Position numbers and translations under genes: made by a program
NCBI GenBank assembly: GCA_001643675.2
Contig: LSRY02000006.1
Coordinates: 434,001 to 498,000 of the forward strand
Origin: Monocercomonoides exilis PA203
Lineage: Eukaryota > Protista > Preaxostyla
Direction of reading: 5' to 3'
Length of the DNA: 64,000 nucleotides
Notes under the pieces: generated by a model
What the model saw: only the letters and a program-made list of their open reading frames with translations
What the model was told of the DNA's origin: nothing
The model's database searches: none
Part shown: piece by piece, positions 9,155 through 64,000 of the stretch
Numbering within the stretch: the first letter of the stretch is position 1
How the letters are laid out: each line of letters begins with the position of its first letter

Positions 9155-9193
<39 letters not shown>

Positions 9194-11318: not shown

Positions 11319-11349
<31 letters not shown>

Positions 11350-39340: not shown

Positions 39341-39524
39341 TACTTCCTTTTTGTTAGATCAATTGAAAATGAACAAAGTGTAATGGGGGAAATTTTCAAA
39401 TTCTGAATTTGTTATTTCAATGCAGTTTGTGTATTGTCATATCATAGAAAATGCAATTTATTTGTTTCAAATTGAGTTAGAAATGCACCCTTTATTCGTC
39501 AAAAAACAGTGACTTCGATCAAAA
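39341..39524. promoter_or_regulatory. Putative bidirectional promoter between VPS39-like (minus) and the giant gene (plus)
   Basis: Only 184 bp separate the two inferred ATGs; this depends on the inferred first exon of the giant gene. Confidence 0.5.
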
Positions 39525-42500: not shown

Positions 42501-45500
42501 TTATTTTTTTTTTCCCTTTTTTTCTTTTATAACATTTTGTTCACTCATTTTTTTTTCCAACTTATCAACTTCATTTTCTTTCAGTGTGGAGAGATTGTCT
42601 TCATGACCAGAACTTGCCAGAAACTTCTTCTGGTTCAAGCAAAGCTGCACACAATCAACAAAAAGGGAAATCTGGTAGCTCCAAAAAACCCGATGAAAAG
42701 ACACCTTCAAGCGGAATGAAGCAAGAACTGAAGCAGTTGTTAGTCAAACCTAAACGACCATCAAGCTCTACATCAACTTCAAGTTCATCATCTTCATCAT
42801 CTTCATCTTCATCTTCATCAACTTCTTTAGCACCTTCTTCATCTCCTCGTTCAACCTCTCCTTCTTCCTTGTCATCTTTGTCATCTTTGCCTTCATTATC
42901 TTCTCTCTCTTCTCTTTCATCTCTTTCCTCCCTTGCTTCTCTTTCTTCCCTTTCCTCTCTCACATCTTCAGCGCCTTCTTCTCTGTCTTCTTTATTGCAA
43001 CAGCAATCCCTCCAGTCAAACCCTGGTCCAAAATCTGTGTTTCCTTCATTTTACAAATATCTTGTCTCTTTCTTTCCAACCACACTTCCTTATGACAATT
43101 ATGCCTCTTCCTCCTCTTCTTCTTTCGACTCTGCTTTTTCTCTCATTTCTTCTCCTGTCTTTGGCCACTCTGCCACACCTTCAGTTTCTTCCAGCGGGTT
43201 CTTGTCGCCCACGTTCACTTCTTTGGATTACTCAGATCCTCTTTCATCGTTGCTGTCTATTTTGATTGGCGACAGCTATTCAACTGAAGACAACTATCGA
43301 ATGAATTTGGAGGAGGAAAATAGCTCTGAGAGTCGGCAAGGCACAGCCGGATACGACCCGGCAGAGTGTTGTGTTCTGGTTGAAATAACTCTTTTCGGGA
43401 TGAAAAGAGACGAGAAAAACAAAAAACTCACTGAAGATGAGCAGATCTCAATTTCAAACAGAATTTCTGAAGGATATTTGCAGAGAATAAAGAAAGACAC
43501 AGAAGAAAATGTTGTGCCTAATGAAGATGCTGTTTGTTTTTGTGTTGAAGATGTTATGAAGAAGAAGCAACAGAGGTTGAAGGAGATTGTTAAATGTGTG
43601 GCGGATGTGTGGTTTGAACACAAAGAGAAATGGATGGATAAATTGAGGCACATCAAAGAGAGAGAAGACGAAGAAGAGGAAAGAGAAAGAGAGAAAGAGA
43701 AAGAGAAACGGAATGAACGAAGAAGAAGATCGATAAGCAGCAAGAAGGAATTGAGAAGTTTAAGAGAAGACAGAGATGAAAGTGATGAAGCATCAATTGA
43801 AGAAGAAGAAGAGGACGAGGAAGAAGAGGAAGAAGAGAATGAAGAAGAAGGGGAGGAAAGCGGAGAGCGAGACGAATGGGAAATCAGCGACGAAGATTTG
43901 AGGCCAATGCAAAGAACAGAAGAAGCAAAGCTGAAAAACTTGCCACACGGAACGATTTTGATTCTGCGTGAGCTGCTTCGTGTGGAAGATGAGTTTGCGT
44001 TTTATGAGGGACTTTCACCATTTGAATGCGAAAAGGTGAAAAAGAAGTTGGCACAGAAAAGACTGGTTGAATTGATTGATGAAATGGACGAGAAAATGAT
44101 TGACAACATTGTTGGCACAACAAAAGAAGATGAGAAGAAGGAGAAAGACGAAGCTCCTTCAGTTTTGGATGAAGCAGAACAGACGGCCACGACTCCTCTT
44201 CCGCATTCAACTGACACTGCCATTGCAATGCCATCCGCACAACCCATTCAACTGAAAGACGAGCCAAAACCTCTTATCGAGCAGTCGGACACAGATCCAA
44301 ATGCAGTTCAGTTTGTGCCTTTGGAGCCTGTGTCAGCTGCTTCAAGGCAAAATGGCGAACTTCCATCGAATGTTGAATCAACTCCAAACAAGAATATTCA
44401 AAACAATTCTTCATCAATTGATTCACCAAGAGCAAATCAACCAAATAAATCTCCATTGAATTTAGCTAAGATCAGTAATTCAAACATATTGTCTGTTTCG
44501 CCAACAGCGGCTCGTATTCACTCTTCATCAGCTCAGAAGGACGAAACGACTGTTACTTATGCGCTGAAAGTTCGGGCATCTTTGTTCACAGACGGATTGA
44601 AAGTGAAGAGATTTCATCCTCTTTCCGATTACGATGGAACAAAAAACGGAGAGCGTTTGTCTGCAAACTTGTATTCCCCACAAGGAAACAACGCTGGCTC
44701 ATCAAGTTTATCTTCATCATTGCAATCCCTCAGTTTATCTGTTTCATCAAATTATTCTTCAGGAGGTGTTAATAACGCTTCATCGAATGATGGAATTCCT
44801 CAGCCACTTTCAGATGTGGATGAAAAGCCATCTCGTAACAATCGCAGGTCTCATAATGACTTTCAATCAAAAGAATCTGTTCATTCAGCTCTTCAACCTC
44901 AAAAGTTTTTTCTTCGTTGTTTTCAACAGACTGCCGTGAACTGGATGATGAAAATGCATGAGAGGAAAATGAGTGTGGTGCTTGCAGATGAAAGCGGACT
45001 GGGGAAAAGAGCATCAATTTTGGCTTTTTTTGGAACGCTCTCTGCAAAACGCCAACACAATCGTGAAAAAAGCAGCAATTCTTCTCGCGATTCTGCTTCA
45101 ATGGAAGTTGAAAATGCAGCACAGATCACTCAGGGAAGCAATACAGATTTGATGAAATGCAGATATCTTGTTGTTTGTTCGACTCTCGCTGTTGCAAAGC
45201 ATTGGGCTAAAGAAGCTCACAAGTGGTGTCCAAATCAAAAGACAGTGATACTTCTGTTTCACAATGTGGATGAAAAAAATAAAGATGCTGAAAGATATGC
45301 AATGGATGAAGAGGAAGCAAGTTCATCAGTTGAAAAGGAAGTTAAAATGCATAAAAAAGATGGAAAGTTGGGAATGAATAAGCAATTATGTGGTTTCATT
45401 GGAAGCAACAATGGTTCCTTACATCGTGTTGTTATGAAGGAATCTCCATTTAGTTTGTTTGAAGCTAGCTTGAATGAAGAAGCAAATAGAATGCCAAATA

Positions 45501-48500
45501 TTTTCGCAAATAAACGTAATGCATCATCTGAAACACAGCATTTTCACAGTGATGATGCAATAAACTATTTATCAATACCAATATCTTCTTCAATGACTTC
45601 GAATCAACTATCAGCAGACAAACAATCACTTATTTTATCTGAAGATTGCGAAGAGTGTATTTTCATTCTTCCATTAAGTCTTCTTTCACAAACTTTATCT
45701 TCAACAATTCTGAACCCCGAATTCGCAAAATGGTTTAACAATAAGAACGACAACATCCAATTATCACAATTTATCAACAAATCTTTTGTTAATTCGTCCA
45801 ACGACATTTTCTCAGAGAGTGCAACTGCTCAGAAAGATGAGCATCCTGTAAAATCTGATCCAGACGGGTTGCTGTTCCCATCATCAACAAGTACTTCTTC
45901 GTTGTCTTTTTCAACCACTTTGGAGAGTAAATCGCAAACACCATTGCGAAACTCTTCCACCCTTTCAAATGGATATGATTTGATGCAAAATAAATTCGGA
46001 AAATCTTCTTCGACATCCACAACAGTTGCATGCTTACTCGATTCAATTCTCAGTGTGAATCCAGAACTTCTGTCATTGCAGTCAATCAACTGGGATACGA
46101 TTGTTCTTGATCTTCATCATCGACTACAGGAACTCTCTATCAATGCATCAGTTCAGATTCCATCTATTCCACAGCTTGAGACTCGAATGAAATGCATTCA
46201 AAAAATCAAAGCACACAATTTGCCATTTGAAAACAACAATGATGCAAATAGTTCATCATTTGCTCAAAGCAATTTTAATGAAATTATTTCTCAATTTGAC
46301 TCAATAATCTCCGAAGCTGCACTTGTCCATCCCTTTTTAGCTCTCACAAAATCTCAGCAGCGTATTATCATTCTTCGACAGTCGCTTTCTGCTTTGTCTG
46401 TGTCGAGCTTCCATCTTCTTCGAGGAGAGAAAATTCCTCGATGCATTTATCAATCAATGAAGAATGCGAATCCTTTAACAACAAAAGAAAAATATTCAAT
46501 TTTTCCAAAAGAATACTCTTTTAATGCATTAAATTCTTTTTCTTCAATTAAAAGAAAGCTGAAGCGATATTCTGTTGCTTCTTCCAACAACTCCAGCGAA
46601 AATGAACCAACAAAAATTGTTCCTCCATCATTTTTCAACAAATCTGAGTCTCTTTCTGCTCTATCATCATTGTGCTCTATTTTCTCACTGCTTCTTCTTC
46701 TCAGACCTTCTGCTGTGGTTGTCTCAAAGATGACACAGCAGCCAATCATAACAGCCAGACTCACACAATTTTCCAATGGCCCTCTTCACAAGCGATCTTT
46801 TCCAAAACTTAACTTGAATTATTTGAGACATGCAGAAAATTTAAGAGAATACAAATCACACGGAAGAGCATTTCAAATGAAGAAAGATCCTAAACTCCAG
46901 CTTCGCATTAGAGGACAGATTCCTGGGCCATTAGGAATCGTTACAGACAACTGGAAGCTTAGCAAGCAGCTTTTGCTACAGTCTCGAAAGGGAAGAAATA
47001 CATTCCACAATCAAAACAGAACTGTAACTCGACTTTATACTGATGGTAATGGATCGATACAAAAAGTTATCAAACAAAATCGAATTAAATCAGCTGGAAA
47101 TGACAGATCAACTTCAGATGATTCGCAAAAGCAGGTTGCATCTTCCCCAGCGAATAATTCTTTGAATTCTTTATCAACCAGCAAGACATCGCAAAATCAG
47201 CAAACTGGGAATGTGAATAATATTTCTTTATTTGGAAAACAATTACATGATTCTCCAAAAGTTGTGTCATCGTCAAGTTATCAAGTGAATGAAAACAGTT
47301 ATGACAGAACTTTGAATACACTGAAAAAGAAAGCTGCTTTTCTTTCTCGGTTTATCACTGTTGATGCATCACAAATAATGCTGATGTTGATGCCATTTAT
47401 TCTCAAACGACGATGGGAGGATGTAGAGTCACAGATTGTGAATCCAACTCAAGCATTCTCTTCAGCTGCATCATTTCCTCAATCATCAACTTCATTTGAT
47501 TCATTGGCAAACAGCTCCCCTGTTCGCCCTATTCGCAATACAGCTGGACAGGTTTCTGCAAGTTGTAATGAAGTTCAATGCTTGGCCAAGTCAAACGAGA
47601 ATTTATTTTCAAGAACTGAAAATTCTCATCTATTAACATCGCATTTTAACACTCATAAGTCTGCATTAACATTCCATTTATTTCGTACTCCTTTGAGCGA
47701 TTCACAGAAAGAGCGTTATTTGAATGAGTTGCAATTTTTTGAGAGAAAGATTCTGCCTTCACTGAATGAATATACCACTCAATGCAGAAACGCTGAGGAA
47801 TTCAACAGAAACAATGGAAATGAATGTCAAAACAGTTTGTGTGCAATTGATAATAAAGCCAACTCAACAAACAATTCTTGCACAAAGACAAAGAAATCAT
47901 CAATTTCTTTTTCTGACGCATTGCAAAAAGAAAGGGACTTGCTTGCATCTGTTGTGACAACTCAATCACGTCTTCATGCAATCACAGTCACTGGATTTCC
48001 TTCGTTTATTCCTCAGTCTCAAGCAGATACATCTTTTCCAAGGAAAACTCGTCCAATGTCTTTTTTAATGCCTTCTCAATTTTATTTTTATCAGCCTTTT
48101 TTCGATTTGACAAAGAACAATTTAGATACATCCATTGCTTCAGATTTGCGAAGGAAGATTTCAAGCGTTCCGGTCATCTTTCCATATCTTTCTGCTCAAT
48201 GCGATGAAGTCAGCATTTTTCAGTCAAATGTTTCTCATCCATCAAACCAATCAGTTTTTTCTATCAAATCTCTCAGCATTCTCCAAACTGCTTTGTGTCA
48301 TTGCAACAACAACTTTAATTTATCTTCAGAATCGTCATCCCCCCTCCGCATCCCTTTCCATGCACGCAGCGCAATGAAAAAGCTTCTTCTTTTTCTTCCT
48401 TCAGCACTTCGGTCTCTTCTCACTCTGACTTCAAGGGATCTTGCCAGTACTGCATGGGAACATGGAATGTCTTATCTCTATTCAGTTTTTTCATTTATTC

Positions 48501-51500
48501 CACAAGCTGCACCAACACACAATTTATCACATAGAATCACAGAGCTTAATTCAAATTTGGAAGAAGATGATCAGTTGGATGACAGTCGAATGGACTCTGA
48601 AGACGACGAACAAAATGAATCAAAGGAAGATGAAGAAGAATTTGTTTATGTGGAAGACAAAATTGATGATCACTTCGTCTGTTTCAAAAAAACCAGAGCG
48701 ATGGATATTGATTATGAGATAAGCACGAACAAAGAAAATTCACGATCATCATCAAAAGAAAATGGAGATTCATCCAACGAGTCAATTGCAATGGAGATTG
48801 ATGAAGAGGAAGTTAATGAAAGCAATTCGACAACAGATGAACTTGAGCTTGAAATGAGCAGATTATCAAGGACACAACAAAAGCGAAGTATCGTTTCTCA
48901 CAACACTTCTTGTGTGACTTCAACAATTCTTTCTCCAATTTTTGGATTGGATTGTTTGAGGGTGATGATGTTGCCTTCACAACCGATTAGCTTACTTCCT
49001 CATTTTGATAACAACTCTTTTGAACGCGTTATTCAATGTTCTGACGAATACATTGAAACATCTTCTCAATTAAAAGGCTTGCCCAAAGTTAGGGATATGT
49101 CAGGAATATCATCATTCGGTCTTTCTTCATCTGCACATCCATTCAATTCACATATTTCCTCACTTGTTTTTGGGCATCCAGTTTCATCTTCCATTCGCAT
49201 TTCTCAGTCAGAGCCAGCAGGATCAAATTCAAAGAAATCTGGCTCTGGTCAATCAAAAAATGAAAAGTCAAAACAATCTCAGAATGAAAAATCAGAAAAG
49301 AAATCCAAAAAAGTTGGCTTTTTCATGGGAGGATGGAAGAAATCACCAAGTGAGAATCAAGAAAAAGATATTCCTGATGTTCATGGAAACTCAAATTTCC
49401 ATTCGCAAACAGAACGTTCAGCCTCATATATTCAATATATTGACAAGATCAACAATCACTCATTATCTACAATCAATCCTTTATTCACAATATCTCAATT
49501 GAAACTATTCAACTTGTTTAAATCTCCTATTCTTCTCAGTGCATTTTGCGCTGATGAAGGAGTGCAATCTCTTCATCATCTTAATCTTTTGTTGAACAAA
49601 AGAGAACAATTAGAGAGTTATTCTTTTGAACATTCTGGCAATTCCTCAACACAAAAATCATCATTTGCTTCGCACAATCAGAAACATAAATCAAATCAAA
49701 TTGCTGAAGTCACACCTTCAAATGCTCATCATTCATTCTTTAAGAATTCGTTCGCAATGAATTCCTATGAACCTCTGCGGTTTAATTTTTCAATTTCAGA
49801 AATATCTCACAATCACGAACTGTTCTTGAAAGAAACACAACTTGAATCATCAGAATTATTTTCCTCAGTTAACGATACATCCAATAAAATCGAAAGAAAA
49901 ACGGATTCTTATGGAGTTTACAGCTCACAAACTTTACCACAAAATTCAAAGTCCGTTAAATTGTCAAGCAGTCCGCAAAAACGCAAAAATTCAGATTCTC
50001 AAAGAGAAGTTGAAAAATCAGATAAAAGCCCAGAAATTTCTAATAAATACCAAAATCAGCTGAATATAAGGCGCTTTTTACAGCCTTCTTCAGCATTGCT
50101 CCCATTCTTTTCTCGAAATCGGAATTCTTCTCCAAACTCTGCTTTGTTTGCAGCCTCGACAAAACTGCAATCGTTGTACACACTTTTGCACTCATGTTGT
50201 GGTTTTAAGGAGAATTCTTTGATATTTTCGAATGTTCCTCTTTCTCCTGCTTCTTCATCAAAAACTATTCATACAATTAATTCGTCAATTAATAATAATA
50301 AAACAAATCTTTCAACTTCTTCAAAGCAGCAATCTCGAGTTCTTGTGTTAACATCAACAGATGCTTCATTTGAACTTGTGTCATCTTTTTTGACAGCTGT
50401 GAATATTCCGTTTTATCAGTTTTTTCCGTCAAGCTATTTCAGCCAAAGTGAAAGCTCATCAAATAAGTCTTCTCATATGAACTCTATAAAGATGGATGTT
50501 GATTCAGAGAATGAAACAATACACGCTAACAACACATCTTCAATGACGAACTCCGAAATGGCTCAACAAAATGAATGGATTTTGTCTCATGCAGATCGTT
50601 TGGAATCATTTGTGTTACTTTGCTCTCTAAATTCTTTCGAAGACGAGCTTCAACTCGAAAGCACAACTCATAAAAATCTTGTTTCTGTTTCACTTTTCAC
50701 CACGTTTTCCAACACAACACCAGAGATGCTCTTCCATTTACAGAAAAACAGCCGTGTTTCTGCAGATGCATCTCGATCTTCTGTTATCCCCACGTATTTT
50801 CTTGAAGGTCTTCATCTTTCAGCTGCAATTGTGTTTGATCAGCCTCCATCACCTGAAGCACTTCTGAGATCATATGCATGCTCACCAGTTGTGCATAGAG
50901 AGGTTCCAACATTCAAAAACTTAACTATTTCTGGTCAGATTTCATCGAAAGATGAAAATAACTCAAATGCTGAAACGAAGTCATCATATTCTCTTATTTC
51001 TTCTTCTGGCAATGAAATTGCATCGTTAACAACGTGCAATCCTCCTTCCATTATCAATGCTCGAATTGCAAACCTTTTCAAGCGTTTGTGCTGGACACAG
51101 TGCAAATTAATTGATGAGCAATCTTCTTCTACTGATCAAGTTTCTCAAGATGATGTGAATCAAGGGATGAGCATCTTTGTGATTGTAGCATCAGACACTT
51201 TGGAAGAAGGAGTTAATCCATTGATTCAAAGCAAATCTGGAAAGCTGCAATTGGAACAGGATTCATCAAAATCTTCATTGCTCCATGCTCTGAATGCAAG
51301 AGATTGCCCCAAAGACAAGTTGATTCAAACACACAAGTTATTATCACAGCGATGCTTTAACTCTTCAAATTCTACAGATACTGTTCTGTCTCGAACATTC
51401 AGAACTTTGTCATCAACAGTTGCATCGACTTCGTATTTTCATTCGTTTTTCGCTCATTCTTTTGATTCTCTTGCTCGTTTAGAGAGAAATGGATGCTTTA

Positions 51501-54500
51501 ATCCAATAATGCATATTGGTCACTATTCATCTTTCCCATGCACTAACTCAGCTATGCTAACTCCATTGCAAATTAAGAATAACAACATTCTCCGTTTCAT
51601 TCAAATGTCATTTTATGCATCCATTTTCTATTCCACGTTCCAGTTCCTATCAAGGACACATCATCCTTTGGTCACTCTACACGAAGTGTTTAATGGAAGA
51701 TCACTTTTATCGACTTCTTATTTATCCCAGCCGCTGAGGCCATTAAACTCTGTAAACATCACACGGCCAATGTCAACATTCGATTTAGCATCTCTTGCAC
51801 TTGCCAATCCATCTTTGAGAACAAACTTTTCTGTTAATGCTTTATCACAGACAGCGCATTCAATTTATTTGATGAAAAAGTCTTTGCGTTCACAGCTTGC
51901 GCTTCAGATTGCTCGAATTGTTTTCTTTTTCATGAACCCTGATGAGTCAGCAAAAACAGATATATGCGCTCCAAAGACGAAACAAGAACTGCCAACTGTG
52001 CTGAACTCAAAAGAAAAGCAAAGCAAGTTGACAAAAGTGGACAAATTAGATATTATTGAAAAGTTAAATGAAAAGCAAGGCTCGCAAATGAATTCAAATA
52101 ATGGAGATATAATTCAAAATTCCGATTCAATCTTTTCATATCTTAGCATCTCCCAGTTTATAGGAGCAGCAACTGCAATTTCAATAGCTACGCAATTCGT
52201 AACATTTCTTTCTGACAATTTCTTGCACTCAGATTCTTCAAATAGCTCTTCACAATTAATATTGTCTCCTATTTCTCCATCAAAGTTTGCCTCTGCTGTA
52301 AATGTCTCTGTCACTCCTTCATCAATTCATTCAATTGCAAAGTTCTTCTCATTCAATCCAAAGCAGAATCTAAATTTGGCTTCGTTGGATGTTCATCGCT
52401 CCATGGAATTTGTGTTTCATAACTCGGACGCTCTTTCAGCAAAGAGAATTGGAAAGCATTTGAAGGGTGGTTGTACAGCAAATCAAGAAAGTATTGTTTC
52501 ACTTGAAGTTAATCCTTTGTCTTCGGCTCCTTCAATTAAACATGGAATCAATAGCGATATTATCTGCTCAAAAGAAATCAATCCAAATAGCTTTTCTCCC
52601 CTTATTCAGTCTCCAAAAAGTGCTTCTGATGAATTAAAGACACAGTTAAATAGCTCAGTGAACGTTGAAAACGAATTAATTTCTGATTTTAAACAGATGC
52701 TTAATCGAGGAAGAGTGGAACTTGAATCGTCTAAGCATTCTATTTCTGAAATTTTATCAACTGCTTCACAATTTGTTCCATTTAGTGAAGGAGCAAAGCC
52801 TGCGAACAAACCTCTGCCTCTTTCTCTTCTTCCTCCTTCGTTCACTCGGCGTTTGTCAGCCTCTCAGAAAATGGCTGGTTTCATCAACAATCGGTTGATA
52901 TGCTCTCTTGAAACGAAACTGAAACAGCTTGCAATTTCAAAAGTTGCATTGTTGAATGAAAACCAGACTAAGCATAAGAACATCAATTCTGCTGATTCTT
53001 CTCAGATTCAAGAGCCACAGCATGCTAATGATTCTGAAACATCTTCATCTCCATCAAATATGGAATTGGATGATAAGACGAAATTTTCAACAACAGAAAC
53101 ACAACCAAATGGAATGATAGCAGACAATGAATCTTTACAAGCATCAGGCCAACCATCAACTCAATCATCAACAGAACAATCAACTTCGTCGAACTTGATT
53201 AATCCAATAAGCCAAGATAACAACTTACCTACTGCTTCATCCAATTTAAATTCCGATTCTTCTGTTGTAACTTCTGATGCAGCCGCGCAGCCACAGAATC
53301 AACAGCCTTCAGAGACATCTTCTTTGAACAGCGACTCCAGCAATCACAACACAGAGACGGATGATCCTTTTTCAAGTGATGAGCAGCCAACTGATTCGTT
53401 GAAAGAAGAAAAAGATGCAAACAAAGCATCTTCAGAAAGTGTTGAACCAGCTGCTTCTTTGGATGTGAAAGACATTCAAAAAGTGATACCAAATGAAAAT
53501 GCAATTTCTCAAGATGAGCTGAGGAAGCTGTACGAAGCAATTCTTACCATTCATCATTCTGTTGAAGCATGGAGACAGTATTTCTTCGTCAATCCACCTG
53601 AAATTTCATTCAATCACAGGCATACTAATTCTTCTGAAAACAACAATTTCAGTGGACAGTTAAATCATTCAAGAAAAATGCACAGACTTTCTGTTTCTCC
53701 ATATGCAAGTGCACCTCAAAGGTATCTTCTTGAGAAGAGCATACAATTTGTGGGAGAATCATCGCTTTTCGTTGGATCAGTTGAAAGAGGATTATCACAT
53801 CTTTCAATCAAACAAAAGAGGCCTGTAAGAAAATCTGAAATTTTGGAGCAAAAAGAACAAGAAAATGAACTGAAAAGACAACAAAAGCAAAGTTATCAAC
53901 GAGTTCTTCAGCAAAAGGAGTATAAGATGAGTTCATTTGAATTGCAAGATTTGCCTTCTGATTCTGATGATTCATTGTGGGACGAAGCAATTACAGACAG
54001 AGCAAACAACAACGGAATTGTCAAGCGACTCTCTCGTTTGTCTTTAACACCTGAACTTCTGATGAATACAGCAGACAAAGAGAACGTACTTCATTTCTCT
54101 GCCTCAACTCCTTTATCCTTGTTTATCCTTCCTGTTCTTTTGCCTTCCTCTCTGCTGATTGGCAGCAACCTCCGCCTCTCATCCCTTGACGAGGTTCCCA
54201 AGCGCCGTGCTCAGCTGTCAATGATCGTTCTTAAGCGCCTTCAAGAAGTGAAAGCGAAAGGCGAAGACGCTCTTCGTAGTTTAATTGCAGCACATCCAGC
54301 GTCAAGGTCAAAGCAGCAGCCTGGAGCTATTTCAATGGATGCTCTGCTGTCTATAAACTCAGAAAACAAGAAGGTTGCTCGACTGGCCGAAAAAATGAAG
54401 ACAAAAATGATTGAAATACAGACGCAAGCGTTTATTGCAAGGGAATCGAGGAAAGAGAATGCAATGAGGCAGCAAATGAAGGAGAAAATGAAGAAGCAAA

Positions 54501-57500
54501 GCAGAGTTGATCGAAACAAGCTGGTCAAACAGCGATCGAGCAGAAGACTGCGAGAAATAGAGAACTATGTGGCCCCTTGGTCGGATGTGTTGAACGAATT
54601 TAACCGGAAAAGCAGCAAGCAAAAGAAGATGTCTCCACATTGCTTTGTGTTCAAGTCACTTCTTCAGCACTTCAACGCATCTGAACTTCAACTGCAGATT
54701 ATTCTGATTTATTATTCAGCTCTTTATTCAGATTCTGCTGCCAAGCGCAGTCTATTCCATCCAAAGGCTTCGCATCCACAGTCATCGAAGTTCAATGCAA
54801 GCAATGGAAGATCTGCTTTATCGCCTTCTTCGCCATCTGCTTCAAATAGTCTGATTGTTTATTCTCCTGCTTCCTCCTCTTCTTCTCCTTATTCAGCGGC
54901 TGTCACATCCTCTAATTTGATGTCAAATCAAAAGAATTTTGAGCTCTCTGCCAAAAACATGTCAAAATTGCTGCGATTCGTCGAATGGTGCTTCTCAAAG
55001 AAGTACAACCCCCATCTTTCAATGATTTGGAGGACAAGAGTAAGGGATGCTATCACAGAACTGAACAAAAAACCGCCTGTGATGCTGTTTTTGGATCATC
55101 CGGATGTTCTGGAAGTGCTTGTTGAACTGATAATGGAAAAGGACGAGGCAGAAAAGAGAGAGAAAGAGATGAGCAACGACAAAAAGACTAAAAGAGACTC
55201 AAATCAGCGTTTCTCTTCTCGTTCTACTTCTCCTTCTCCGTCTGCAACAACATCACCTTCATCTTCTGTTATCTCTCCTTCGAACACATTCTCCTCTCAA
55301 AATGGTTCATCAACTTATTCTCAAAGATCTCACACTCCATCACCTCCGTCTTCATCCACATCTCTTCCTTCATCTGAAACAGCACTCCTTTCAGACAGCC
55401 TCTGGACAGTTAGCAACATCCCTGCCAACTTCACGCAAACAGCCAATCCACTCACTGACTTCTCTGGAGTTCCTGGTCTCTACGTCAAAAGAGCATCACA
55501 GCAAAACCAGTTGAAGTCTAGTCAAATGACTTCGCTGCATTCAACAGGCAGTTCATATCTGCACCCGGCAACGAGATTGTCAGGACAGCCTTTCTCGTTG
55601 GAGAGTGGATCAGCTTTATCTTATTCATCTCGGTATTCGTCAGGAAATAATTCATTGGCATCTGCTTCATCAACATCAGCCATGCTGAAAAGCCTTCCTT
55701 CTTCATCTTCCCTCACAACGCAGCTGTCTTCCATGCTTACCACTCCTCTTTCCTGCGCCATCATTCAATCAGCAACAGCCTCACAAGTTCATCTTGCTTC
55801 ACCTTCCACACATCATTTGTCTTCAAAGTATCACTACGCCATCTCAAATTTCAACAACCTGATTGCAAAGAGAAGAGCAGACGGACACGCTGCTCCTGTT
55901 TTGTCTGAGCCAGGCGACTATCCATTTGTTGCATCGCGTGTGCAGACACGAACAGGCGGAAGACGCACTCAGCAGGCTGTTGCTGCAGTTGCTGCATTGG
56001 CTGCGTCTTCTTCGTACTCTGTGGAAAGCGCCCAGAGATCGCTGGAGCTTCCAGCGTATCCTGCTGCTGCATCTGTGCCTATTAATTCGTCTGGCAATTA
56101 TGCAAGAGGCAATTCTTCAGCACTTTATTCAACAACAGCCACTTCTCCTGTACCTTCTGCACCATCAATTTCTCCCATGTCATCTTTGAGCGGTGCCACT
56201 TCAGCATCTGTCACTCCATCATTTGTGTCTGCACCTTTTTCACTTTCAACGTCGCCTGATCCAAATGCTGCTGATTCTTCATTATCTCCCTCATCTTCTG
56301 GCCTGTATGAAGACCAGTGTGATCCTCTATCTTATCGCAGTGGTTTAGCCCAGGCTATTAACACAGCCATCCGAGCAGCAAACAGCAGAATCAAAGAAGA
56401 AATGGAGCGATGTGGCATTTCTGAACCTTCTCTGCTGAATGAAGAGAATCCATTTGCGTATTCTTCTTCTTCTTCTGCATATGAAGCAAATGCACAAAAC
56501 AGAGCATTTGTACCGTCTTTGGAAGCTTCGACAAGAAATCATGAAGGAAATAACAATACTTGGCAAAACAACAGAAGTGGTTCTTTGAATCAATACTGTT
56601 TGGGATATGTTAATTCCTCAATGCTCAAAGGGTTTGGATTGGGTATTGATGAAGAAGATGAAGAAGACGAATATGATATTGATGATGAAGACGAAGAGGA
56701 AGATGATGAAGATGAAGATGAAGAGGAGGAAGATGAAGAAGAAAATGATGAAGCGAATGACTTCTTTGATAATAACAAGAATGATATTTCTCAAACAAAG
56801 AAAAATGGAAAATTTGGAGAGCAAAGCATTCAAATGGAAGAGGACGTCAAAATTGCATTGCCTCAGAAAACAGAAGAAGGAAATGTTTCAGTGAAATCAG
56901 AGTTCAATTCAGCTGTTTCTTCACCATTTGCGTCAACTTCTCTTTCAATTGCACCTTCTGCATCCAGCAAGGTTTCTATTCCTTCTCCTTCTTCAATCTC
57001 CTCTAAGTTTGCTTCTCCTTTATCCCCATCTGAGCTGAGGCGCCTGATGCACACCGTCCCCTCTCCTTCTCGCATGCTTTCTTTGGGAGATCATCTGCTT
57101 CTTCCTCAGTTCGCATACATATTTTCGCGCGAGCAGCATCTTTTGCATGAAATGTACAGCAAAACAGCACCAGCTCCAAAGGACGAACACACAAACAGTC
57201 CAAAGGAAATGCCAAAGTTTGCTGTTCCGCCGTTGAATTCATCATCGATTCGCTTTGTGGACGATGCATCTGTATTCACATCTTCGTTACTGCTCGACCA
57301 GAAGTCCTCAAATGGTTCAAATGTCAAATCTTCGAATTCAAAGCACAAAAGCATAAATGCATCCTCTTCTCAGTTAATTTCCCACTCTCATTACCAAGCC
57401 CTCTTTTCAGACCCCAACTCACCTTCTTTGGACTCTTCTTCTTCCTCCTCTTCTTCTTCCTCTGATTCATCTCCCAGTGCATCCTCAACACCTGTTGCAT

Positions 57501-60346
57501 CTGCAACACCAAAGTCCTCCTTATCGTTTACCTCTGCCTCTGCCTCAATTGCCGTATCGCCTCAGCTGTGTCTGGAAAAATGCGACAGAAAACAGCTGGC
57601 GTGCGACCTGTCCACACAGCACGTGTCTTCGCTTGCTGCTCTTTTCGAGGCGCAAAAGGCGATTTGGAGCAAAGCGACGCTGTTGAATGCAGAATTGATG
57701 GAGTCGCTGAACGAAGCAAAGGCAAAGAACGAAATGGCATTCAACAACTCCGTTCGCGATCTGATTAAACAGATATTGGCTGAGCTTAATGAAGAGAAGA
57801 AGGAAAGAAGCCAAACATCTGCTACATCTTTTGCTTCAACTATTTCAACAGTCAACAATGAAGCCACTTCGGCGATGGATAATTCTGTGGTTCCTCTGGC
57901 AAGATCACGGCCAGCGTCTCCTTCACCTGTTGGTCTATCATCTGCTTCGGCTCTTTCTTCTCCTGCTTCTCCTTCTCCTTCTCCTTCTTTATCACCTTCT
58001 TCAACTCAATCCGACTTCTCAAACTCTTCTGCTGGTTCAACACAAATTGCATTGTTGTCAAAACAGAAGAATGTGAATGATGGCTTAATCGAAAAATCTG
58101 CTGATCTGCCAAAAATACGAACATTTTTCTTTGGCGGGTCACATGGTTATCCAACATATTCATCATTCAGCAATTCCAATGAAATGGATCAATCAAATCC
58201 AAACAATTCATCCAGCTCATCTTCTCAAATTGTTCCTCTTCGATCATCAATTAATAACAGAAACAGTCAGAACTCTTTACTCCGAGTGTACAACTTATCA
58301 TTGCATTCCCCCATTCGTCAGTCAGTTTTGGGTCTGCCTCCTCCAATCGTGCGCCGCCGCATCCCTCCGCAGATTGAAACTGCCGAACAGCAGCTGCTCC
58401 GAGCAATGAAGACATTTGTCATTTCCACAGTGCGAAAGGAGATCTGGCGGAACACACCTGCCCAGCTTGGATCGATCTTGTCTAACTTGTCAGAAACACA
58501 GCGAGAGCTGGTTAGTTCTTTGAAACCTCCGCCTTTTAGCACTTTGAAGGTGTTTGGGGTTCAATCGCACCAGAAACAGCAGAGCGGCAGTCAATTGCAT
58601 GGAAGAAAAGGAGCAGAAAAGATGAAGAAGACAGCTGCTGGTGGATGGCAGAAGAGGCGAGCCACACGCCAATCGCAGGACGACAGCGAAAGAGGAAGCA
58701 GAGGAACTGGAATTGGCGCGGGTGCAGCCTCAGGTGCTGATCAGAGAGGAATGTCTGGAAGGAAAGTGGGAACGAAAATTCGGATCACATCAAGAGGAGA
58801 CAGAGAAAAGCGGACACTTGGCTTGACTACGCAGGAGAACGACGAAGAAGCGCTCTTCGCAAACAGCCCGACACCTTCTGAAAGCACAGCCGCTGCATCT
58901 TCTGCAGATTCATCAGCTGGCTTGGGTACTTCCAGTGCGCATGCACCAGCAGGTGCTGAGAAGGCTTCGGCGTCTGCTATGAGGCAGATCCAACAGCTGT
59001 CGGATCGGAGATTGATTCCATATGATTATCTGAACGAGGCACTGAAGAAGGAATCAGCTGAGCTTATAAACAAACTGAAGCGCATCGACACACCTACTCC
59101 TCTGCTCTATCGCTGGGTCAGAGCAACGCGCTGGATGAAGAATGCCATCCGTGGATTTGTCGTGACAATACAAGAAGCTCCAATCGTCACCAATCTGATA
59201 GCTCCTCAGACTCAGCCCAAAAACGGGAATGTGATGAACAAGCCGCAAGGCAGTCAGCCTAATCCAAATGGCTCACCAGCATCTTCTGCCTCATCTGCTG
59301 TCTCCACTCCTCAAAGCACCACACTTTATCCCAATCCAAATTTAGGCCCTTTGGCAAACAGAAATCTGCAGCAACCTTCAAATGCTGCTGGTTCATCCAA
59401 TCCTTCAATGAAAGCTGCTTCTTCTTCCTTGTCTTCTCTGAAGCTCTCAACAACCGAGCAGCAGCCTGCTTCTTCTTCAGCATCAGCCTCACCTTCTCAA
59501 TCTCCTCAGACTCAGCCTCGCATTCAGCGGAGAATTGTGACTAGATACATGCCGTACATGACTGTATACACTCCTCACGGCACCATCAGCTCCCAAACGA
59601 AGGGATTCCGCTGGTATCCTCAGGCCGACTTCAACAGATACTACGAGGCGCTGTGTGGAACGACGTTTTCAACGCCTGCTGTTCCTTTCACTCACTCGCT
59701 GCTGTCGCGTGCTGCACTTGCCCACTACACCTCCATTGGCGATGCTTACTGGCAGAAGGCAAAGAACATTTCTGGTGTGAACTACTTCCGGAAGTTCTTC
59801 GACTCTGCCGTTGAGATCTCTGCTGAGGTGAACAGGGAGATTGCCAAGTATGCGAGTGCTGAAGGGAAGGTTATTCTGACGCGGGGGATAAGAGGATGGG
59901 AAGAGGACCTCAGCAGAGAAATCCAGCTGCAGCGGGAGAAGCTGCCGGCGGGGACGAAGCTGAATGTGGATTACCTGCGGATGATGAAGGTAAAGTCCGC
60001 AAAGATCAGAGAGGAAATGGAAGTATCGCTGAAGAAAAAGAAGGAGAGAATTGCAGAAGTTGAAAAGGAGAAAGAGAGGCTGACAACTCTGTTGAGCATC
60101 ATTCTTTCTCAGATCGGTGATAAAATGGTTCAGGAAGGACAAATGACAAATGAGAAAGAGCAGATGAAAAATGATGGATCAGCTTCTACAGCTCCGTCCT
60201 CTCCAAACGCATTACCTGCAAATACCAATCAGCAAGAGATGTCAAATTCTTTATCATCTTCAGCATCATCATCATCTACTTCTTCTTCTTCTCAAAACTC
60301 TGCAAATCCAACTGCATCTTCCACAGCTGCATCTGCTCAAAACATG

Positions 60347-60378
<32 letters not shown>

Positions 60379-63361
60379 TGCATCGCCAACTCAATCTCAA
60401 TCTCCATCATTAGCATCAACACCAGTCTCGCCAGCAGAGTCATCAGGCTCTTCAACCCCAACGACTCCATCGCAAAATCAGACTCCAACTCCAAATGCTA
60501 ATGCCAATACAAATGCTTTTGACAGAGCCAACTCACCAACAACCGATCAAAAGCCCTTCCCTTCGATGTCCACCCTCATTTCCTGCATCGAGCCGTCCAA
60601 CCTGCGCCTTCTGTCAGCGCTGAATGTGATTCCGACCGAGGCGCAGATTGCGAAGTACCGCCACCGTGTGGAAGACGAGACGCTGGTGCAGGCCTTCAAA
60701 GAGCGCATGATCGACGCTGCACAGCTGAGCGACCTGACCGTTGCGTCGTGTGTAAAGTGGCTCAACAGCTACCTGCGCTCCACCACCAACGCCATGATCA
60801 ACTATCTCCCGCAGTTCCCGCAGCCGTTCAGCACGATCCAGACACGGTCATTGTCGTCAACAGGATTCAGACAGAGGACAGACAAACTGGCTTCGCACAG
60901 AATGTACTTCGAGAAGATGCTTAATGATGTCAGATATTCTCAGCGGAATTTGAGTCAGCAGGCGAAGCTGGCTGAAAGCAAGGCTGCTTCATCATCTTCA
61001 TCTGGATCTGCATCTGCATCTTTATCAGCTGTTAGACTTGTGCAATCACCAGCTTCGGTTTTAGGCGGTCTTTCTTCATCGCCTTCTCCTTCAGTGACAG
61101 TATCCACCTCTTCTGCAACAAGTTCGAGTTTGACTTCGCCTTCTCCAACATCCTCGCCAAATCCTGCAATAACATCACCTGAGCCAACATCTTCTCCTCT
61201 TCAATCAACTCCACAGACTGAAAAGAAAGAGCTGCAGACAGGAGCAACTCCTTCAACAGATGCGCTTTCAAGACAGAAATCAGCTTCTCCTTCGAATGTC
61301 TTCCAGTCTTCGTCGCCTCTACAGCCAACAATAGTGTCTGACTCGTCGTTGGCTCAGTCGTCCTCCACCCCTTCTCCTGCTGTGGAGAATGCAGCAGAAC
61401 AATCCAGTGCTCGCCCAGCAAGTGTTTCATCTCCTTCTTCGTTGTCTGTCTCTCCAGCAGCACAGCACAGCTCTCAATCTTCGCAGCAAGCTTCTCTTCA
61501 AAAACACAATCAGGTGAATCCAATGAGGCAGAATGTAATGCCCCAAACACAAATTTTGGAATTCTTGCTTGCTCATTCAGATTTTGCTTCAACTGGCAAA
61601 AGCGCAATGCCTCGAACTTCACCTCTTTTGACAGTCCTTTCAACAAATGTGAATTCGACCTCTGTTTCATCCATTATGTTCAACCATGCTTCATCTTCAT
61701 TGTCCTCTACGCCTTCTGTGTCTTCTCAGCATCTGAAGTCATTCAGTGATGCGGGAGTGTCGATCAGTCCGTTGGCGTCGTGCACGCCTTTGCACGGCAC
61801 AGGAACTGACTCGTCAATTGATGTGCCTGCTGTAATCACTGCTGCTTCTGCTGCCAACAAAGCAAATGCTTCATCGTCCTCATTGGCGATTTCTCCACCT
61901 CCCTCCTCTCTTCAGGTTTCTTCTCTTTCTTCACTTTCTACCTCTCCATCTACAGCAAGCATTAAAAGTGAAGAATCTGCGGTTCCTTCAACAACACCTA
62001 AAAATGTTGAATCTATTAGCTCGGAAACGCCAAAGTCTGAAAAATCTTCTTCTCCACTCACAATTAGCTTTTCCTCTCTTCTGCCTGAATCTGCAAATGC
62101 ATCGTCGTTATCTTCATCATCTTCTTTGAGCATCGATTCATCGGAAATTGTTTCAGAGGCATCGCAAGATGCTTTACAAAGGCAAATTAATGAAAGGAAG
62201 CTAATGATTGGAAGAGGCAAAGGAAGAAAAGGAAGAAAGCAACAGAACCAAAAATCAGAAGAAATTGATGTGCAGGAAATAAGTAGTGAATTATCAGCAA
62301 CGGAAATGAATAAAAATAGTAATGCTTATAATGGTGATGTTTCAACAGCCGATGAGGATAGCGATGTTAACAGCGAAAAAGAAGAGAGAAGCAAGAAAGG
62401 AAATAACTCAGAAAATAACCAAAATGAAAATGATGGAAAGTTAAGAAGAAATAAAAAGCACAATGAAAAGGAAGAGAATAAAAACGGACAGAGAAAAGCC
62501 GCTTTGCAGGAGAAGCAGAAAGATGATTCACAAATTTGGGACTTGAGCAAAGAAAATCACTTACTGATTTGTGATGTGGCTCAATACAGCGTTTGGGTAT
62601 CAATGGCAGATCAAAATGCAAGCAGCAAGGAAACAGACTCATTTTCATTCAGAAACAGCAATCTTCCCAAGTTTGCTGATTCCATAAGGTTCTCATTTAC
62701 TGCTGATCAGTCATTCGCCCAGCTCTTCACGCCTCTGATTAATCACCAGCTTCAAGTCGCGTTTGCCAAGCAGATTTCTCAAATAGCATCATCTTTGCTG
62801 GTTTCACAGCGGGGCGTCTCGCGCATTCATCTGGAAATACTAAGACGAGGAAAAGTGCCTTTCCCACTTCCGAAGCGTCTGACTGCGTTGGAGCGGGCGA
62901 TTGTCCTTCTGCTGGAAATATCTCTGTGTCTTCTGCAGAACAACCATCTGCTTCCGCCTGCTGTTGTTTCGATGCTGCTGTCATTGAAGGAACTGCCTGG
63001 TTGTGGGAACTTTGTTGATCGTTTGGTTGAGATTATTCCTGCTGCGATGAGAGAAATAGCAAGCAGTGCATGTCCTGTCAAGATGCTCAAAATAGCTGAA
63101 GATGCCACCCCGCAGATTGGTGGCTCGAGTTTTGATCGAAGCTATCGGAGAAACAAGAATTCAGATGAAAATGATACGAAAGTTGAAAGAAATACAGAAG
63201 CAATCGAAAAATTAAATGGGAATAACAGCTCTTCCATTGCAGATTCATCAAGGAAAGATGGGAAATTAAAGAGGCATCTACCTTTCTCTTCAGGTTCCTC
63301 AAAATTGTTTCAAATAGAATCAGCACTTGCAAATTCCCCAATAACAACCTTGTCATCATCA

Positions 63362-63396
<35 letters not shown>

Positions 63397-64000
63397 TTCC
63401 TCTTCCTCTTCCTCTTCCTCTTCCTCTTCCTCTTCCTCTTCCTCCTCAACTGCTTCTTCCTCTTCTTCTTCCTCATCTTCTGTTGGCGATTTAACGATCA
63501 GTCAGAAGCTTTCCAAAGCAAATCTTGTCTCCACAGATACTGTTCATGCATATATTCAAATTGCTCAAAAACAACATGTTTATTATGAAGATCTGAGGCG
63601 ACCAATTACGTATCTTCTGGAAAAAGAGGGGGTTTATCACACTTTCAGTGAGAAGGCACAGAGTGTTGCTCAAGCAGCGGAGTCATCTGCTTCACTTGAA
63701 AAATCTAATTCTTTGGATAATTCTGATAGAGCTCCTCAAAACAATGCAAGCAACAAAGCCGATGGAAATAAGTCAGAAAATTCAATAAGCTTGCCGGAGC
63801 AGAAAGTCAGTTATGGAAATGACAACAGAATGGACATTGAACCTTCTTCTGTCAGTTCGGAAGCGGCGCAAGAAAGTCAAACTATCACAACCTCAACCTC
63901 TCAATCAAATGGAAATAATGAAACAGCATCTGCAAATAACCAAGAAAAGAAAAGTTTTCTGATGCAAAGAATCCAACCACGAAGACACAAATACTCTGTG
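39525..64000 (+). CDS. Giant (>8000 aa, 3'-incomplete) protein: FKBP15-like PH/WH1 + FKBP module, HSA-like helix, degenerate SWR1/p400-type Snf2 ATPase, and >4000 aa unassigned C-terminal region
   Basis: Inferred exons 39525-39527 (ATG only, least certain), 39672-39736, 39808-39964, 40071-42432 and 42585 to beyond 64000, all phase-compatible GT-AG. In the last exon, codons start at positions = 2 mod 3. I found no stop in the many lines translated, and the ORF track lists no stop-terminated ORF in that frame. Snf2 motifs: LRCFQQTAVNWM..MHERKMSVVLADESGLGKR (Walker A 44984-45010), YLVVCST....HWAKEAHKWCP, WDTIVLDLHH (Walker B 46109-46120), PFILKRRWEDVESQI, STKLQSLYTLL, SRVLVLTS...LVSSFL, IFVIVASDTLEE. 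Confidence 0.85.
63353..63448 (+). repeat. (TCTTCC)n-based tract encoding ~32 consecutive serines in the giant protein
   Basis: Read directly in the coding frame. Confidence 0.85.

What the first reader, a model, noticed from the sequence alone, without database searches (positions are those of the whole stretch)
42585..64000. Hidden stop-free exon of >21 kb: a >8000-aa protein missed by the ORF track
Seen: after the intron 42433-42584, one + frame runs ~7138 codons to the window end. No stop was found in the lines translated by hand. Every + ORF the track lists there lies in a different frame, as expected if this frame never closes. Composition (Ser-rich spacers between hydrophobic islands) is coding-like throughout. 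With the upstream exons, the product is at least ~8000 aa. Inference: it is one of the largest genes in this genome, and the many short ORFs listed here are shadows.
Basis: seen in the sequence. Interest (0 to 1): 0.85.

Follow-up and report, generated by a model that had tools for sequence, protein, structure and literature searches.

The report
Giant single-exon degenerate Snf2 gene
A real, uninterrupted 25.6-kb coding exon in the mitochondrion-less protist Monocercomonoides exilis encodes most of a roughly 9,350-residue (about 1 MDa) protein that descends from Snf2 chromatin-remodelling ATPases but has lost their catalytic residues. It is very large but otherwise an ordinary kind of gene, and the public protein sets searched here do not hold it.

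Summary
The + frame is stop-free from window 42533 to a TAG at 68156, 4.1 kb past the window end. That is 8,541 codons, where shuffles give about 490 stops and the other five frames hold 327-625.

Codon usage matches other genes of this genome along the whole length. There are no intron-like segments, no tandem or dispersed repeats and no paralogues. Four RNA runs hold 97-100% of the sampled words of 44000-50000.

The ORF list missed the frame only because it omits ORFs that run off the window.

The genome is Monocercomonoides exilis (82.3 Mb, 101 contigs). With the two upstream exons the CDS is at least 9,345 codons.

The product is an Snf2-family derivative. Pfam PF00176 matches residues 797-916, and both ATPase lobes are colinear with active Snf2 proteins. 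Walker A is GKR, DEAH is EEAN, and both motif VI arginines are Gln, so it is probably a non-enzymatic scaffold.

A SWR1/p400 assignment is not supported. No self or orthologue hit turned up in public protein sets that do hold other M. exilis proteins.

This scan has already noted a larger giant ORF elsewhere in this genome.

The parts
39808..39964 (+). First recognisable coding exon. The frame is open from 39803, an acceptor-like AG sits at 39806-7 and the first in-frame ATG is at 39863. It codes the N-terminal strands of a possible WH1/PH-like fold. The true 5' end is unresolved.
   Evidence: Reading of the sequence. A weak WH1 match lies in the adjoining exon.
39965..40070 (+). Intron 1: 106 nt, GTATG...AG, phase 0.
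   Evidence: Sequence. A 110-nt stretch around it (39962-40071) has GC 0.18. The published mean intron is 119 nt with 27.6% GC.
40071..42432 (+).
   Evidence: The frame is open from 39963 to 42437. WH1 scores E 0.064 on its first 60 aa. There is no FKBP match in Pfam or PDB sequences.
42433..42584 (+). Intron 2: 152 nt, GTGTG...TTTCAG, phase 1. It joins exon 2 to the giant exon in frame.
   Evidence: GC is 0.26 in the intron against 0.44 just after the AG. No AATAAA or AAATAA lies between the unspliced stop (42438) and the first ATG of the giant frame (42716). The junction itself was not tested with reads.
42585..64000 (+). Giant terminal coding exon. It continues past the window to 68155, with stop TAG at 68156-68158 (= L003:4156-4158). 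In all: 25,571 coding nt, 8,523 whole codons and 936 kDa.
43816..43854 (+).
44921..45280 (+). Snf2-related domain match, ORF residues 797-916: the Q motif, motif I and motif Ia.
   Evidence: PF00176 at 53.7 bits, E 2e-14, cut-off 24.9. The six-frame search gives 50.6 bits. PDB Snf2 chains align here.
45005..45010 (+). End of Walker A: K825-R826, so GLGKR where active Snf2 proteins have GLGKT.
   Evidence: Alignments.
45476..45487 (+). Motif II position: E982-E983-A984-N985 in place of DEAH.
   Evidence: MAFFT alignment A2.
45584..45736 (+). Motif III remnant (SSSMTSN, residues 1018-1024, in place of TGTPLQN) and the FxxWF motif (FAKWF, 1064-1068).
46328..46333 (+). HPxL motif (H1266-P1267) at the end of the N-lobe and protrusion. 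About 1,330 residues of insert follow before motif IV.
50309..51262 (+). Degenerate C-lobe, residues 2593-2910. It holds motif IV (2593-2630), a GxxLxxA..D...P block (2759-2774), motif VI with both Arg replaced by Gln (2863-2872) and a post-VI strand and helix (2879-2910). Two inserts of about 40-90 residues lie within it.
   Evidence: hhalign E 0.047, BLASTP E 0.002 and the colinear MAFFT alignment A3. Pfam Helicase_C, PDB sequences and my C-lobe profile do not detect it.

Best explanation
Window 42585 onwards is the terminal exon of one protein-coding gene of Monocercomonoides exilis. The exon has 25,571 coding bases and ends at TAG 68156, 4.1 kb past the window. With two upstream exons (39808/39863-39964 and 40071-42432) the CDS is at least 28,035 nt, or 9,345 codons, giving a protein of about 1 MDa.

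Shown: the open frame, its coding-type codon usage along the whole length, the absence of internal intron-like or repeated sequence, a single copy in the genome, and RNA-derived contigs covering 44000-50000.

The protein descends from Snf2-family ATPases. Residues 790-1270 are colinear with the N-lobe and protrusion: Q motif, I, Ia, II, III, FxxWF and HPxL. Residues 2593-2910 are colinear with the C-lobe: IV, V and VI.

The residues needed for ATP hydrolysis are replaced. Walker A GKT is GKR, DEAH is EEAN, TGTPLQN is SSSMTSN, and both motif VI arginines are Gln.

About 60% of the chain is low-complexity sequence (18% Ser overall, several acidic runs) between ordered-looking islands. None of those islands matched a family in the searches run.

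Inferred: the protein no longer remodels by ATP hydrolysis. It would act as a very large, mostly disordered, probably nuclear scaffold that keeps an Snf2-like nucleosome- or DNA-binding core. Its N-terminal WH1-like module and acidic and Ser-rich linkers would serve as docking and phosphorylation surfaces.
For: Open frame.

Coding signal: RSCU correlation 0.95 with three reference genes, 0.82-0.92 per quarter, and shadow ORFs lower.

No internal introns by donor, composition and pyrimidine-tract scan, and only one T7 run in 25.6 kb.

No tandem, direct or protein-level repeats. No RNA family.

The sequence turns AT-rich right after the stop, with the published poly(A) motifs 390-570 nt downstream.

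Expression: four metatranscriptomic RNA runs of one study hold 0.97-1.00 of the sampled 31-mers of 44000-50000. Each run holds 60-65 million letters, fewer than the 82.3-Mb genome, so an even DNA carry-over could not cover the stretch. The likely source is the rRNA-depleted directional RNA-seq of the M. exilis culture (PMC12308965).

One gene rather than two: the intron keeps the frame, GC jumps from 0.26 to 0.44 at the AG, and there is no poly(A) hexamer in the 275 nt between the unspliced stop and the first ATG.

Snf2 descent: PF00176 above its cut-off, PDB Snf2 chains and colinear alignments.

Single copy.

Organism: 82,301,135 bases in 101 contigs agrees with the published ONT assembly (PMC8767320). 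A 100% hit named Monocercomonoides exilis lies on a contig of the same length as C16.
Against: Neither splice junction, the transcript ends, nor coverage of the other 19.6 kb of the exon was seen.

Logan contigs cannot exclude rarer spliced or prematurely polyadenylated isoforms, and 33 AATAAA/AAATAA hexamers lie inside the exon.

The C-lobe assignment rests on weak statistics (E 0.047 and 0.002 for single comparisons). Pfam Helicase_C, PDB sequences and my own C-lobe profile all miss it.

Loss of activity is read from motifs only.

No orthologue was found, so purifying selection could not be measured.

Nuclear localisation is not shown, and only three short K/R clusters were found.

The single-sequence structure model was useless (mean pLDDT 45).
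Confidence: 0.82

Rival explanations
1. Two genes, not one. A WH1-like protein of about 830 aa would end at the TGA at 42438. A separate gene would start at ATG 42716 and encode about 8,480 aa. The '42433-42584 intron' would then be 3' UTR, intergenic spacer and 5' UTR.
For: Read unspliced, the upstream frame closes two codons after the proposed donor. An in-frame ATG lies 44 codons after the acceptor. The donor is GTGTG rather than the common GTATG. The junction was not seen in reads. The M. exilis paper describes gene-dense regions where gene models overlap in their UTRs.
Against: Frame is kept across a GT...AG of typical length and GC. GC rises from 0.26 to 0.44 exactly at the AG, not at the ATG. 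No AATAAA or AAATAA lies in the 275-nt gap, although these are the published poly(A) motifs. The gap is also far shorter than the mean 3' UTR (312 nt) plus any promoter. No separate protein of 432-1,375 aa matching exon 2 is in the protein collection.
Confidence: 0.13
2. The frame is open but is not all exon. One or more in-frame, stop-free introns, or internal polyadenylation or re-initiation sites, would break the 25.6 kb into a shorter mature message or several products.
For: Only 6 kb of the 25.6 kb was tested against RNA contigs. Such contigs drop rare forms. 33 poly(A)-like hexamers occur inside. Five 90-130-nt windows reach GC 0.26 or lower.
Against: No segment combines a donor, low GC, T-richness and a pyrimidine tract before AG (0 candidates in two scans). 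M. exilis introns average 27.6% GC, and a 120-nt AT-rich stretch seldom stays stop-free. Codon usage is gene-like in every quarter. Words of 44000-50000 are 97-100% present in RNA contigs.
Confidence: 0.07
3. It is an active remodelling ATPase of the SWR1/p400 type (the reading of finding s1-471188), only very diverged and inflated by inserts.
For: Both lobes are present and colinear. The catalytic Glu position of motif II is still Glu (E983) and the Walker A Lys is kept (K825). An insert of about 1,330 aa sits at the SWR1/INO80 insertion site. The genome keeps ARP4 and ARP6 (PMC6759080).
Against: Walker A Thr is Arg, motif III is lost and both motif VI arginines are Gln. No HSA match lies in this gene, while locus C13 has HSA plus an intact split ATPase and is the better SWR1 candidate. 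PDB similarity ranks Fft3, ISWI and RAD26/ERCC6 above p400 and SRCAP. Inter-lobe spacings of 1,400-2,000 aa occur in at least five other Snf2 loci here, so the insert is not diagnostic.
Confidence: 0.08
4. It is not a functional gene: a chance or compositional open frame, an assembly artefact or a decaying pseudogene.
For: No homologue is known beyond the Snf2 motifs. 60% of the chain is low-complexity. It is absent from the protein sets searched.
Against: About 490 stops are expected and none is seen. Nanopore errors break frames rather than open them. Codon usage is gene-like. The stretch is present in RNA. Ser is coded by all six codons in proportions broadly like the reference genes, and repeats are few.
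Confidence: 0.01

Closest known systems
SRCAP / EP400 / SWR1 (INO80-like split Snf2 ATPases; PDB 6igm, 8qr1, 9b1d matched)
   Same: Snf2 N-lobe and C-lobe separated by a long insert; very long, largely disordered chains of about 3,100-3,200 aa in the human proteins; weak sequence matches to motif I.
   Different: About three times longer. No HSA domain detected. Catalytic motifs I, II, III and VI are replaced. Sequence similarity is no better than to Fft3, ISWI or ERCC6. This genome has another locus (C13) with HSA and an intact split ATPase.
Yeast Eaf1, the NuA4 scaffold related to p400 that lacks the ATPase (from my own knowledge; the relation of NuA4, SWR1 and TIP60 is stated in the abstract of PMC11995519)
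   Same: The idea of a remodeler-derived platform protein that works without ATP hydrolysis.
   Different: Eaf1 has HSA and SANT domains and no ATPase lobes. Here the lobes are kept in degenerate form and HSA and SANT were not found.
C16 Snf2 paralogue of M. exilis (P0070, 'putative SNF2 superfamily family', 1,598 aa)
   Same: Closest relative inside the genome: 26% identity over 130 aa, E 6e-7. Same organism and same habit of long inserts.
   Different: P0070 has full PF00176 and PF00271 matches and strong PDB hits. It is publicly annotated and about one sixth the length.
Other giant uninterrupted genes of M. exilis (scan note s1-463717: a 50-kb gene of 16,659 aa for a beta-helix surface protein)
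   Same: Same genome; a single huge exon; reported as not found in public protein sets.
   Different: That one is built of 34 tandem modules and belongs to a large family. This one has no internal repeats and no paralogue.

Membership tests
Snf2 family (SF2 helicase-like ATPases) | Snf2-related N-terminal domain (Pfam PF00176) above the curated cut-off | tested here: met
   53.7 bits against a cut-off of 24.9, E 2e-14, but only profile positions 1-92 of 290. The six-frame search gives 50.6 bits. The rest of the lobe is colinear in MAFFT.
Snf2 family (SF2 helicase-like ATPases) | Helicase C-terminal lobe (Pfam PF00271; motifs IV-VI) | tested here: inconclusive
   No Pfam or PDB-sequence match, and missed by my C-lobe profile in the genome search. 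Colinear remnants are present: hhalign E 0.047, BLASTP E 0.002 and MAFFT A3 with 7 invariant columns.
Snf2 family (SF2 helicase-like ATPases) | Catalytic motifs: Walker A GxGKT/S, motif II DExH, motif VI with two arginines | tested here: not met
   GLGKR (R826), EEAN (982-985), and Q2869 and Q2872 in place of the arginines. It is therefore filed as a descendant of the family, not as an active member.
SWR1 / SRCAP / p400 / INO80 subfamilies | HSA (or DBINO) domain N-terminal to the ATPase | tested here: not met
   A PF07529 search of the whole genome matches C13 and a weak C8 site, not this gene. PF13892 matched nowhere, in the controls either, so that search says nothing. Pfam found nothing on residues 19-750.
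SWR1 / SRCAP / p400 / INO80 subfamilies | Long insert between the two ATPase lobes | tested here: met
   About 1,330 residues lie between HPxL (1266-7) and motif IV (about 2593). This is not diagnostic here: C13, C25, C69, C8 and C14 have spacings of 1,400-2,000 aa.
SWR1 / SRCAP / p400 / INO80 subfamilies | Closer in sequence to these subfamilies than to other Snf2 subfamilies | tested here: not met
   PDB ranking: Fft3 30.1 bits, ISWI 28.3, RAD26 26.2, ERCC6 25.4, p400 23.8, SRCAP 18.6. The best library hits include SMARCAD1-named proteins and, by my own reading of their sequences, ERCC6-like fragments.
FKBP15-like N-terminal module (WH1/PH-like fold plus FKBP domain) | WH1/PH-like domain and FKBP-type PPIase domain detectable | tested here: inconclusive
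   WH1 scores E 0.064, below the cut-off, on the first 60 aa of exon 2. FKBP_C was not detected in Pfam at E up to 10 on the whole exon or on its halves, and no FKBP chain appears among the PDB matches.

The most novel reading that the evidence does not exclude
A megadalton pseudo-remodeler. M. exilis would keep a single-copy Snf2-derived protein whose ATPase is dead but whose two lobes are retained as a nucleosome-binding module. That module would be fused to a WH1/FKBP-like head and embedded in about 5,000 residues of Ser-rich and acidic disorder. It would be a naturally occurring intermediate between an active p400-type remodeler and an ATPase-less scaffold such as Eaf1, and it is missing from the public gene set.
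Probability: 0.25. Interest if true: 0.55.

Novelty: new variant of a known kind. Interest (0 to 1): 0.36.

Why it matters
First, it is an annotation point. A gene of about 28 kb, roughly 1 MDa of protein, in a model amitochondriate eukaryote was not found in protein collections that do hold other M. exilis, Paratrimastix and Blattamonas proteins. Proteome-based inventories of chromatin machinery in this organism may therefore be incomplete.

Second, Snf2-family proteins that keep both lobes but have lost Walker A Thr, DExH and both motif VI arginines are, to my knowledge, rarely described. If this one is stable and nuclear, it would be a natural test of what an Snf2 core does without ATP hydrolysis.

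Third, together with the other giant open frames in this genome, it shows that M. exilis tolerates and expresses very long intron-free exons. That bears on how its gene-prediction pipelines should be tuned.

Tried and rejected
(1) Read laying on 39501-45400 with the four RNA runs.

(2) Pfam on the long pieces (4,000 and 3,155 aa) found nothing real. Only pieces of about 600 aa showed PF00176. Tiling the whole ORF gave no other family above its cut-off.

(3) The search for homologous proteins found nothing with the N-lobe region in the 3.9-12.5k-aa class or with exon 2. The control with the C16 paralogue shows that the M. exilis proteome is in the collection.

(4) The representative library gave only distant Snf2 fragments, at most 38% identity over 150 aa or fewer, among the best hits.

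(5) The ESM-atlas feature search on residues 5675-6115 gave no usable hit.

(6) Single-sequence AlphaFold on residues 7157-7456 gave mean pLDDT 45, so no fold search was run.

(7) Exact look-ups of neighbouring ORFs, and the look-up of encoding contigs with the downstream acetyltransferase, were tried to see the public gene calls. Neither was on record, and that tool may withhold the window's own genome.

(8) My first by-eye motif II (DLHH, about residue 1193) was rejected after MAFFT placed motif II at 982-985, with FxxWF and HPxL colinear.

(9) A nematode-operon or trans-splicing reading of the TTTCAG acceptor was dropped once the organism was identified.

(10) The spliced model was not joined.
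Full report
**1. Observation**

A script over the window shows that the + frame with codon starts at p mod 3 = 2 has no stop from 42533 to 64000, 7,156 codons.

The window is G000:C58:434001-498000. I fetched the next 30 kb and followed the frame. The first stop is TAG at window coordinate 68156 (L003:4156-4158), so the open frame is 8,541 codons. The genome search tool reports the same on its own: open_frame_aa 8541, no stops inside.

Over these 25,623 bases the other five frames hold 327-625 stops each. Shuffles give 492 +/- 20 stops in this frame. Chance is excluded.

All 19 + ORFs of 60 aa or more listed for 42585-64000 lie in the other two frames. The list lacks the giant frame because the ORF listing leaves out ORFs that run off the source.

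**2. Is it one exon?**

- Tandem Repeats Finder sees only eight short rows, the longest 110 nt.
- There are no direct repeats of 60 nt or more.
- SEG-filtered BLASTP of 300-aa chunks against each other finds nothing. The open frame is therefore not a repeat artefact.
- No segment combines a donor (GTATG, GTGTG, GTAAG and similar) with GC of 0.30-0.32 or less and a pyrimidine tract before AG. The second scan also required T-richness. The 25.6 kb holds a single T7 run.
- By contrast, the 39962-40071 stretch around intron 1 has GC 0.18 and intron 2 has GC 0.26, both with long T tracts. The published mean intron is 119 nt at 27.6% GC.
- Relative synonymous codon usage in the frame correlates 0.95 with three other genes of the genome: the C16 Snf2 paralogue, the Vps39/41-like gene and the Metallophos gene. 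The two other + frames give 0.71 and 0.44. The four quarters of the exon give 0.91, 0.91, 0.82 and 0.92.
- The listed short ORFs, pooled, give 0.67 (+) and 0.78 (-). The same intervals read in the giant frame give 0.94. They are shadows.
- After the TAG the sequence turns AT-rich. The published poly(A) motifs AAATAA and AATAAA occur 390-570 nt downstream.

**3. Expression**

The look-up of sequencing runs found four metatranscriptomic RNA runs of one study (2024, 'synthetic metagenome'). They hold 0.97-1.00 of the sampled 31-mers of 44000-50000.

Each run holds 60-65 million letters, fewer than the 82.3-Mb genome. Even DNA carry-over could therefore not cover a given 6 kb completely, so RNA is the likelier source.

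The runs fit the rRNA-depleted directional RNA-seq of the polyxenic M. exilis culture (PMC12308965). That link is my inference.

As a result, no junction, strand, end or depth was seen, and 19.6 kb of the exon is untested against RNA.

After that call I sent no reference covering 43816-43854 to any search tool; queries start at 43856 or 43900, or end at 43813. Two local scripts handled the whole translated ORF offline, including a self-comparison. The ORF listing read the window without translation.

**4. Organism**

Earlier follow-up notes of this scan name Monocercomonoides exilis. I checked this in two ways.
- G000 has 82,301,135 bases in 101 contigs. The ONT assembly paper reports 101 contigs and about 82.3 Mbp (PMC8767320).
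- The C16 Snf2 paralogue hits, at 100% identity, an NCBI/UniRef protein named 'putative SNF2 superfamily family [Monocercomonoides exilis]'. It lies on a contig of 1,407,046 bases, which is the length of C16.

**5. Gene model**

- Exon 2 is 40071-42432, preceded by a 106-nt GTATG...AG intron (39965-40070).
- Before that lies an exon ending at 39964. Its frame is open from 39803, with an acceptor-like AG at 39806-7 and a first in-frame ATG at 39863.
- Intron 2 (42433-42584) is phase 1 and keeps the frame: G of 42432 plus TG of 42585-6.
- Counting from ATG 39863, the CDS is 102 + 2,362 + 25,571 = 28,035 nt, or 9,345 codons.
- The exon-3 product alone is 936 kDa with pI 6.5.
- The 5' end is unresolved. 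A short-exon gene on the minus strand fills 38240-39400.

The one-gene reading is favoured over two genes for three reasons. GC jumps from 0.26 to 0.44 at the AG. No poly(A) hexamer lies between the unspliced stop (42438) and the first ATG of the giant frame (42716). The gap is only 275 nt. I put the two-gene rival at 0.13.

Exons were searched apart by reference.

**6. What the protein is**

Pfam on pieces of thousands of residues found nothing real. On a 600-aa piece it finds the SNF2-related domain PF00176 at ORF residues 797-916 (53.7 bits, cut-off 24.9). Tiling the whole ORF in pieces of 300-785 aa gave no other family above its cut-off.

PDB sequences of Fft3, ISWI, RAD26/ERCC6, SMARCAD1, p400, CHD1 and SRCAP all align to the Q motif and motif I.

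A MAFFT alignment with seven Snf2 proteins from the library search is colinear through these features:
- motif I: GLGKR, K825-R826
- motif Ia and the W..E..KWCP block
- motif II: EEAN at 982-985, where the others have DEAH or DEGH
- motif III: SSSMTSN at 1018-1024, against TGTPLQN
- FxxWF: FAKWF at 1064-1068
- the Q..Y helix
- HPxL: H1266-P1267

This corrected my first by-eye motif II.

About 1,330 residues later a degenerate C-lobe follows:
- motif IV (2593-2630; hhalign E 0.047)
- a G..L..A...D....P block (2759-2774)
- motif VI, with Q2863 and D2868 kept but both arginines replaced by Gln (Q2869, Q2872)
- the post-VI strand and helix (2879-2910; BLASTP E 0.002; alignment)

Pfam Helicase_C, PDB sequences and my C-lobe profile miss this lobe, which itself measures how far it has decayed.

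I conclude descent from an Snf2 ATPase (shown) and loss of ATP hydrolysis (inferred from four motifs). This agrees with the first-stage note s1-471467.

**7. Subfamily**

The SWR1/p400 label of note s1-471188 is not supported.
- No HSA match lies in this gene. Locus C13 has HSA, an intact N-lobe (E 4e-88) and a C-lobe 1,434 aa away.
- PDB scores do not favour p400 or SRCAP.
- A huge inter-lobe spacing is not diagnostic here. C13, C25, C69, C8 and C14 all have 1,400-2,000 aa.
- The nearest paralogue is C16 (26% identity over 130 aa, E 6e-7), an active-looking split Snf2.

The 'FKBP15-like' head gets only a sub-threshold WH1 match (E 0.064) and no FKBP match.

**8. The rest of the chain**

A crude hydrophobicity and entropy scan calls about 3,200 of the 8,541 residues ordered-looking, in 32 islands. 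Ser is 18% of all residues. There are nine Ser runs of 6-32 residues, three acidic runs, and three short K/R clusters. Ser uses all six codons in proportions broadly like the reference genes.

Three islands searched against the genome have no paralogue. Only weak hits (E 1e-4 or above, 26-39% identity) appeared for one of them. The atlas feature search and a single-sequence AlphaFold model gave nothing usable.

**9. Public record**

The collection behind search for homologous proteins holds M. exilis, Paratrimastix pyriformis and Blattamonas nauphoetae proteins. Even so:
- the N-lobe region found nothing among proteins of 3.9-12.5k aa;
- the representative library, which has no stated length limit on its proteins, found neither a self hit nor a close relative for residues 751-1350;
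- exon 2 found nothing among proteins of 432-1,375 aa.

Either the gene is not in the public protein set or records of the window's own locus are withheld. One tool says this may happen. I could not tell these two cases apart.

Papers on the genome do not mention the gene. Text searches of the 2019 and 2021 genome papers found chromatin mentioned only for ARP4/ARP6, centromeric chromatin and one cited reference.

**10. Verdict**

The thing itself is a very large, single-copy, apparently expressed gene for a decayed Snf2-family protein. That makes it a new variant of a known kind.

It is among the largest genes of the genome, not the largest. This scan has already noted a 16,659-aa ORF on another contig (s1-463717, unchecked by me).

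Interest is moderate to low. It is a useful annotation correction and a possible natural pseudo-remodeler, but no function has been tested.

Noticed in passing
G000 loci C13:128214-135605, C25:2171579-2177635, C69:874855-882459, C8:1015625-1023554, C14:2109839-2116043: At least five other Snf2 genes of this genome have 1,400-2,000 residues between the N-lobe and the C-lobe, all inside single open frames of 2,200-3,640 aa. C13 also carries the only HSA match above the Pfam cut-off, so it is the best SWR1/Snf2-type candidate.
   Followed up: partly
L003:4948-5529 (-), i.e. window coordinates 68948-69529: A 193-aa intron-less ORF with bacterial-type hexapeptide-repeat transferase domains (PF00132, E 1e-14) lies 0.8 kb past the giant gene's stop, convergent with it. 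It is a possible laterally acquired acetyltransferase.
   Followed up: partly
window 38240-39400 (-): A gene of several short exons on the minus strand fills the gap between the Vps39/41-like gene and the giant gene. It was not identified, and it limits where the giant gene's first exon can lie.
   Followed up: no
window 5369-12928 (-): A 2,520-aa open frame whose only recognisable domain is an N-terminal calcineurin-like phosphoesterase (PF00149, residues 58-248). It is another very long, mostly unannotatable single-exon gene.
   Followed up: no
window 18731-26506 (-) and 35-2434 (+): Two open frames (2,592 aa and at least 800 aa) end in a partial Tyr/Ser-Thr kinase domain that matches only the C-terminal part of the profile. 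This fits the giant receptor-pseudokinase family already noted by this scan.
   Followed up: no
window 32954-38110 (-): A 1,719-aa open frame with Vps39 domain 1 and Vps41 TPR-like matches, a HOPS/CORVET-type tethering subunit.
   Followed up: no
The tool says its filter also trips by chance and is no evidence of anything. I worked beside the stretch.
   Followed up: no
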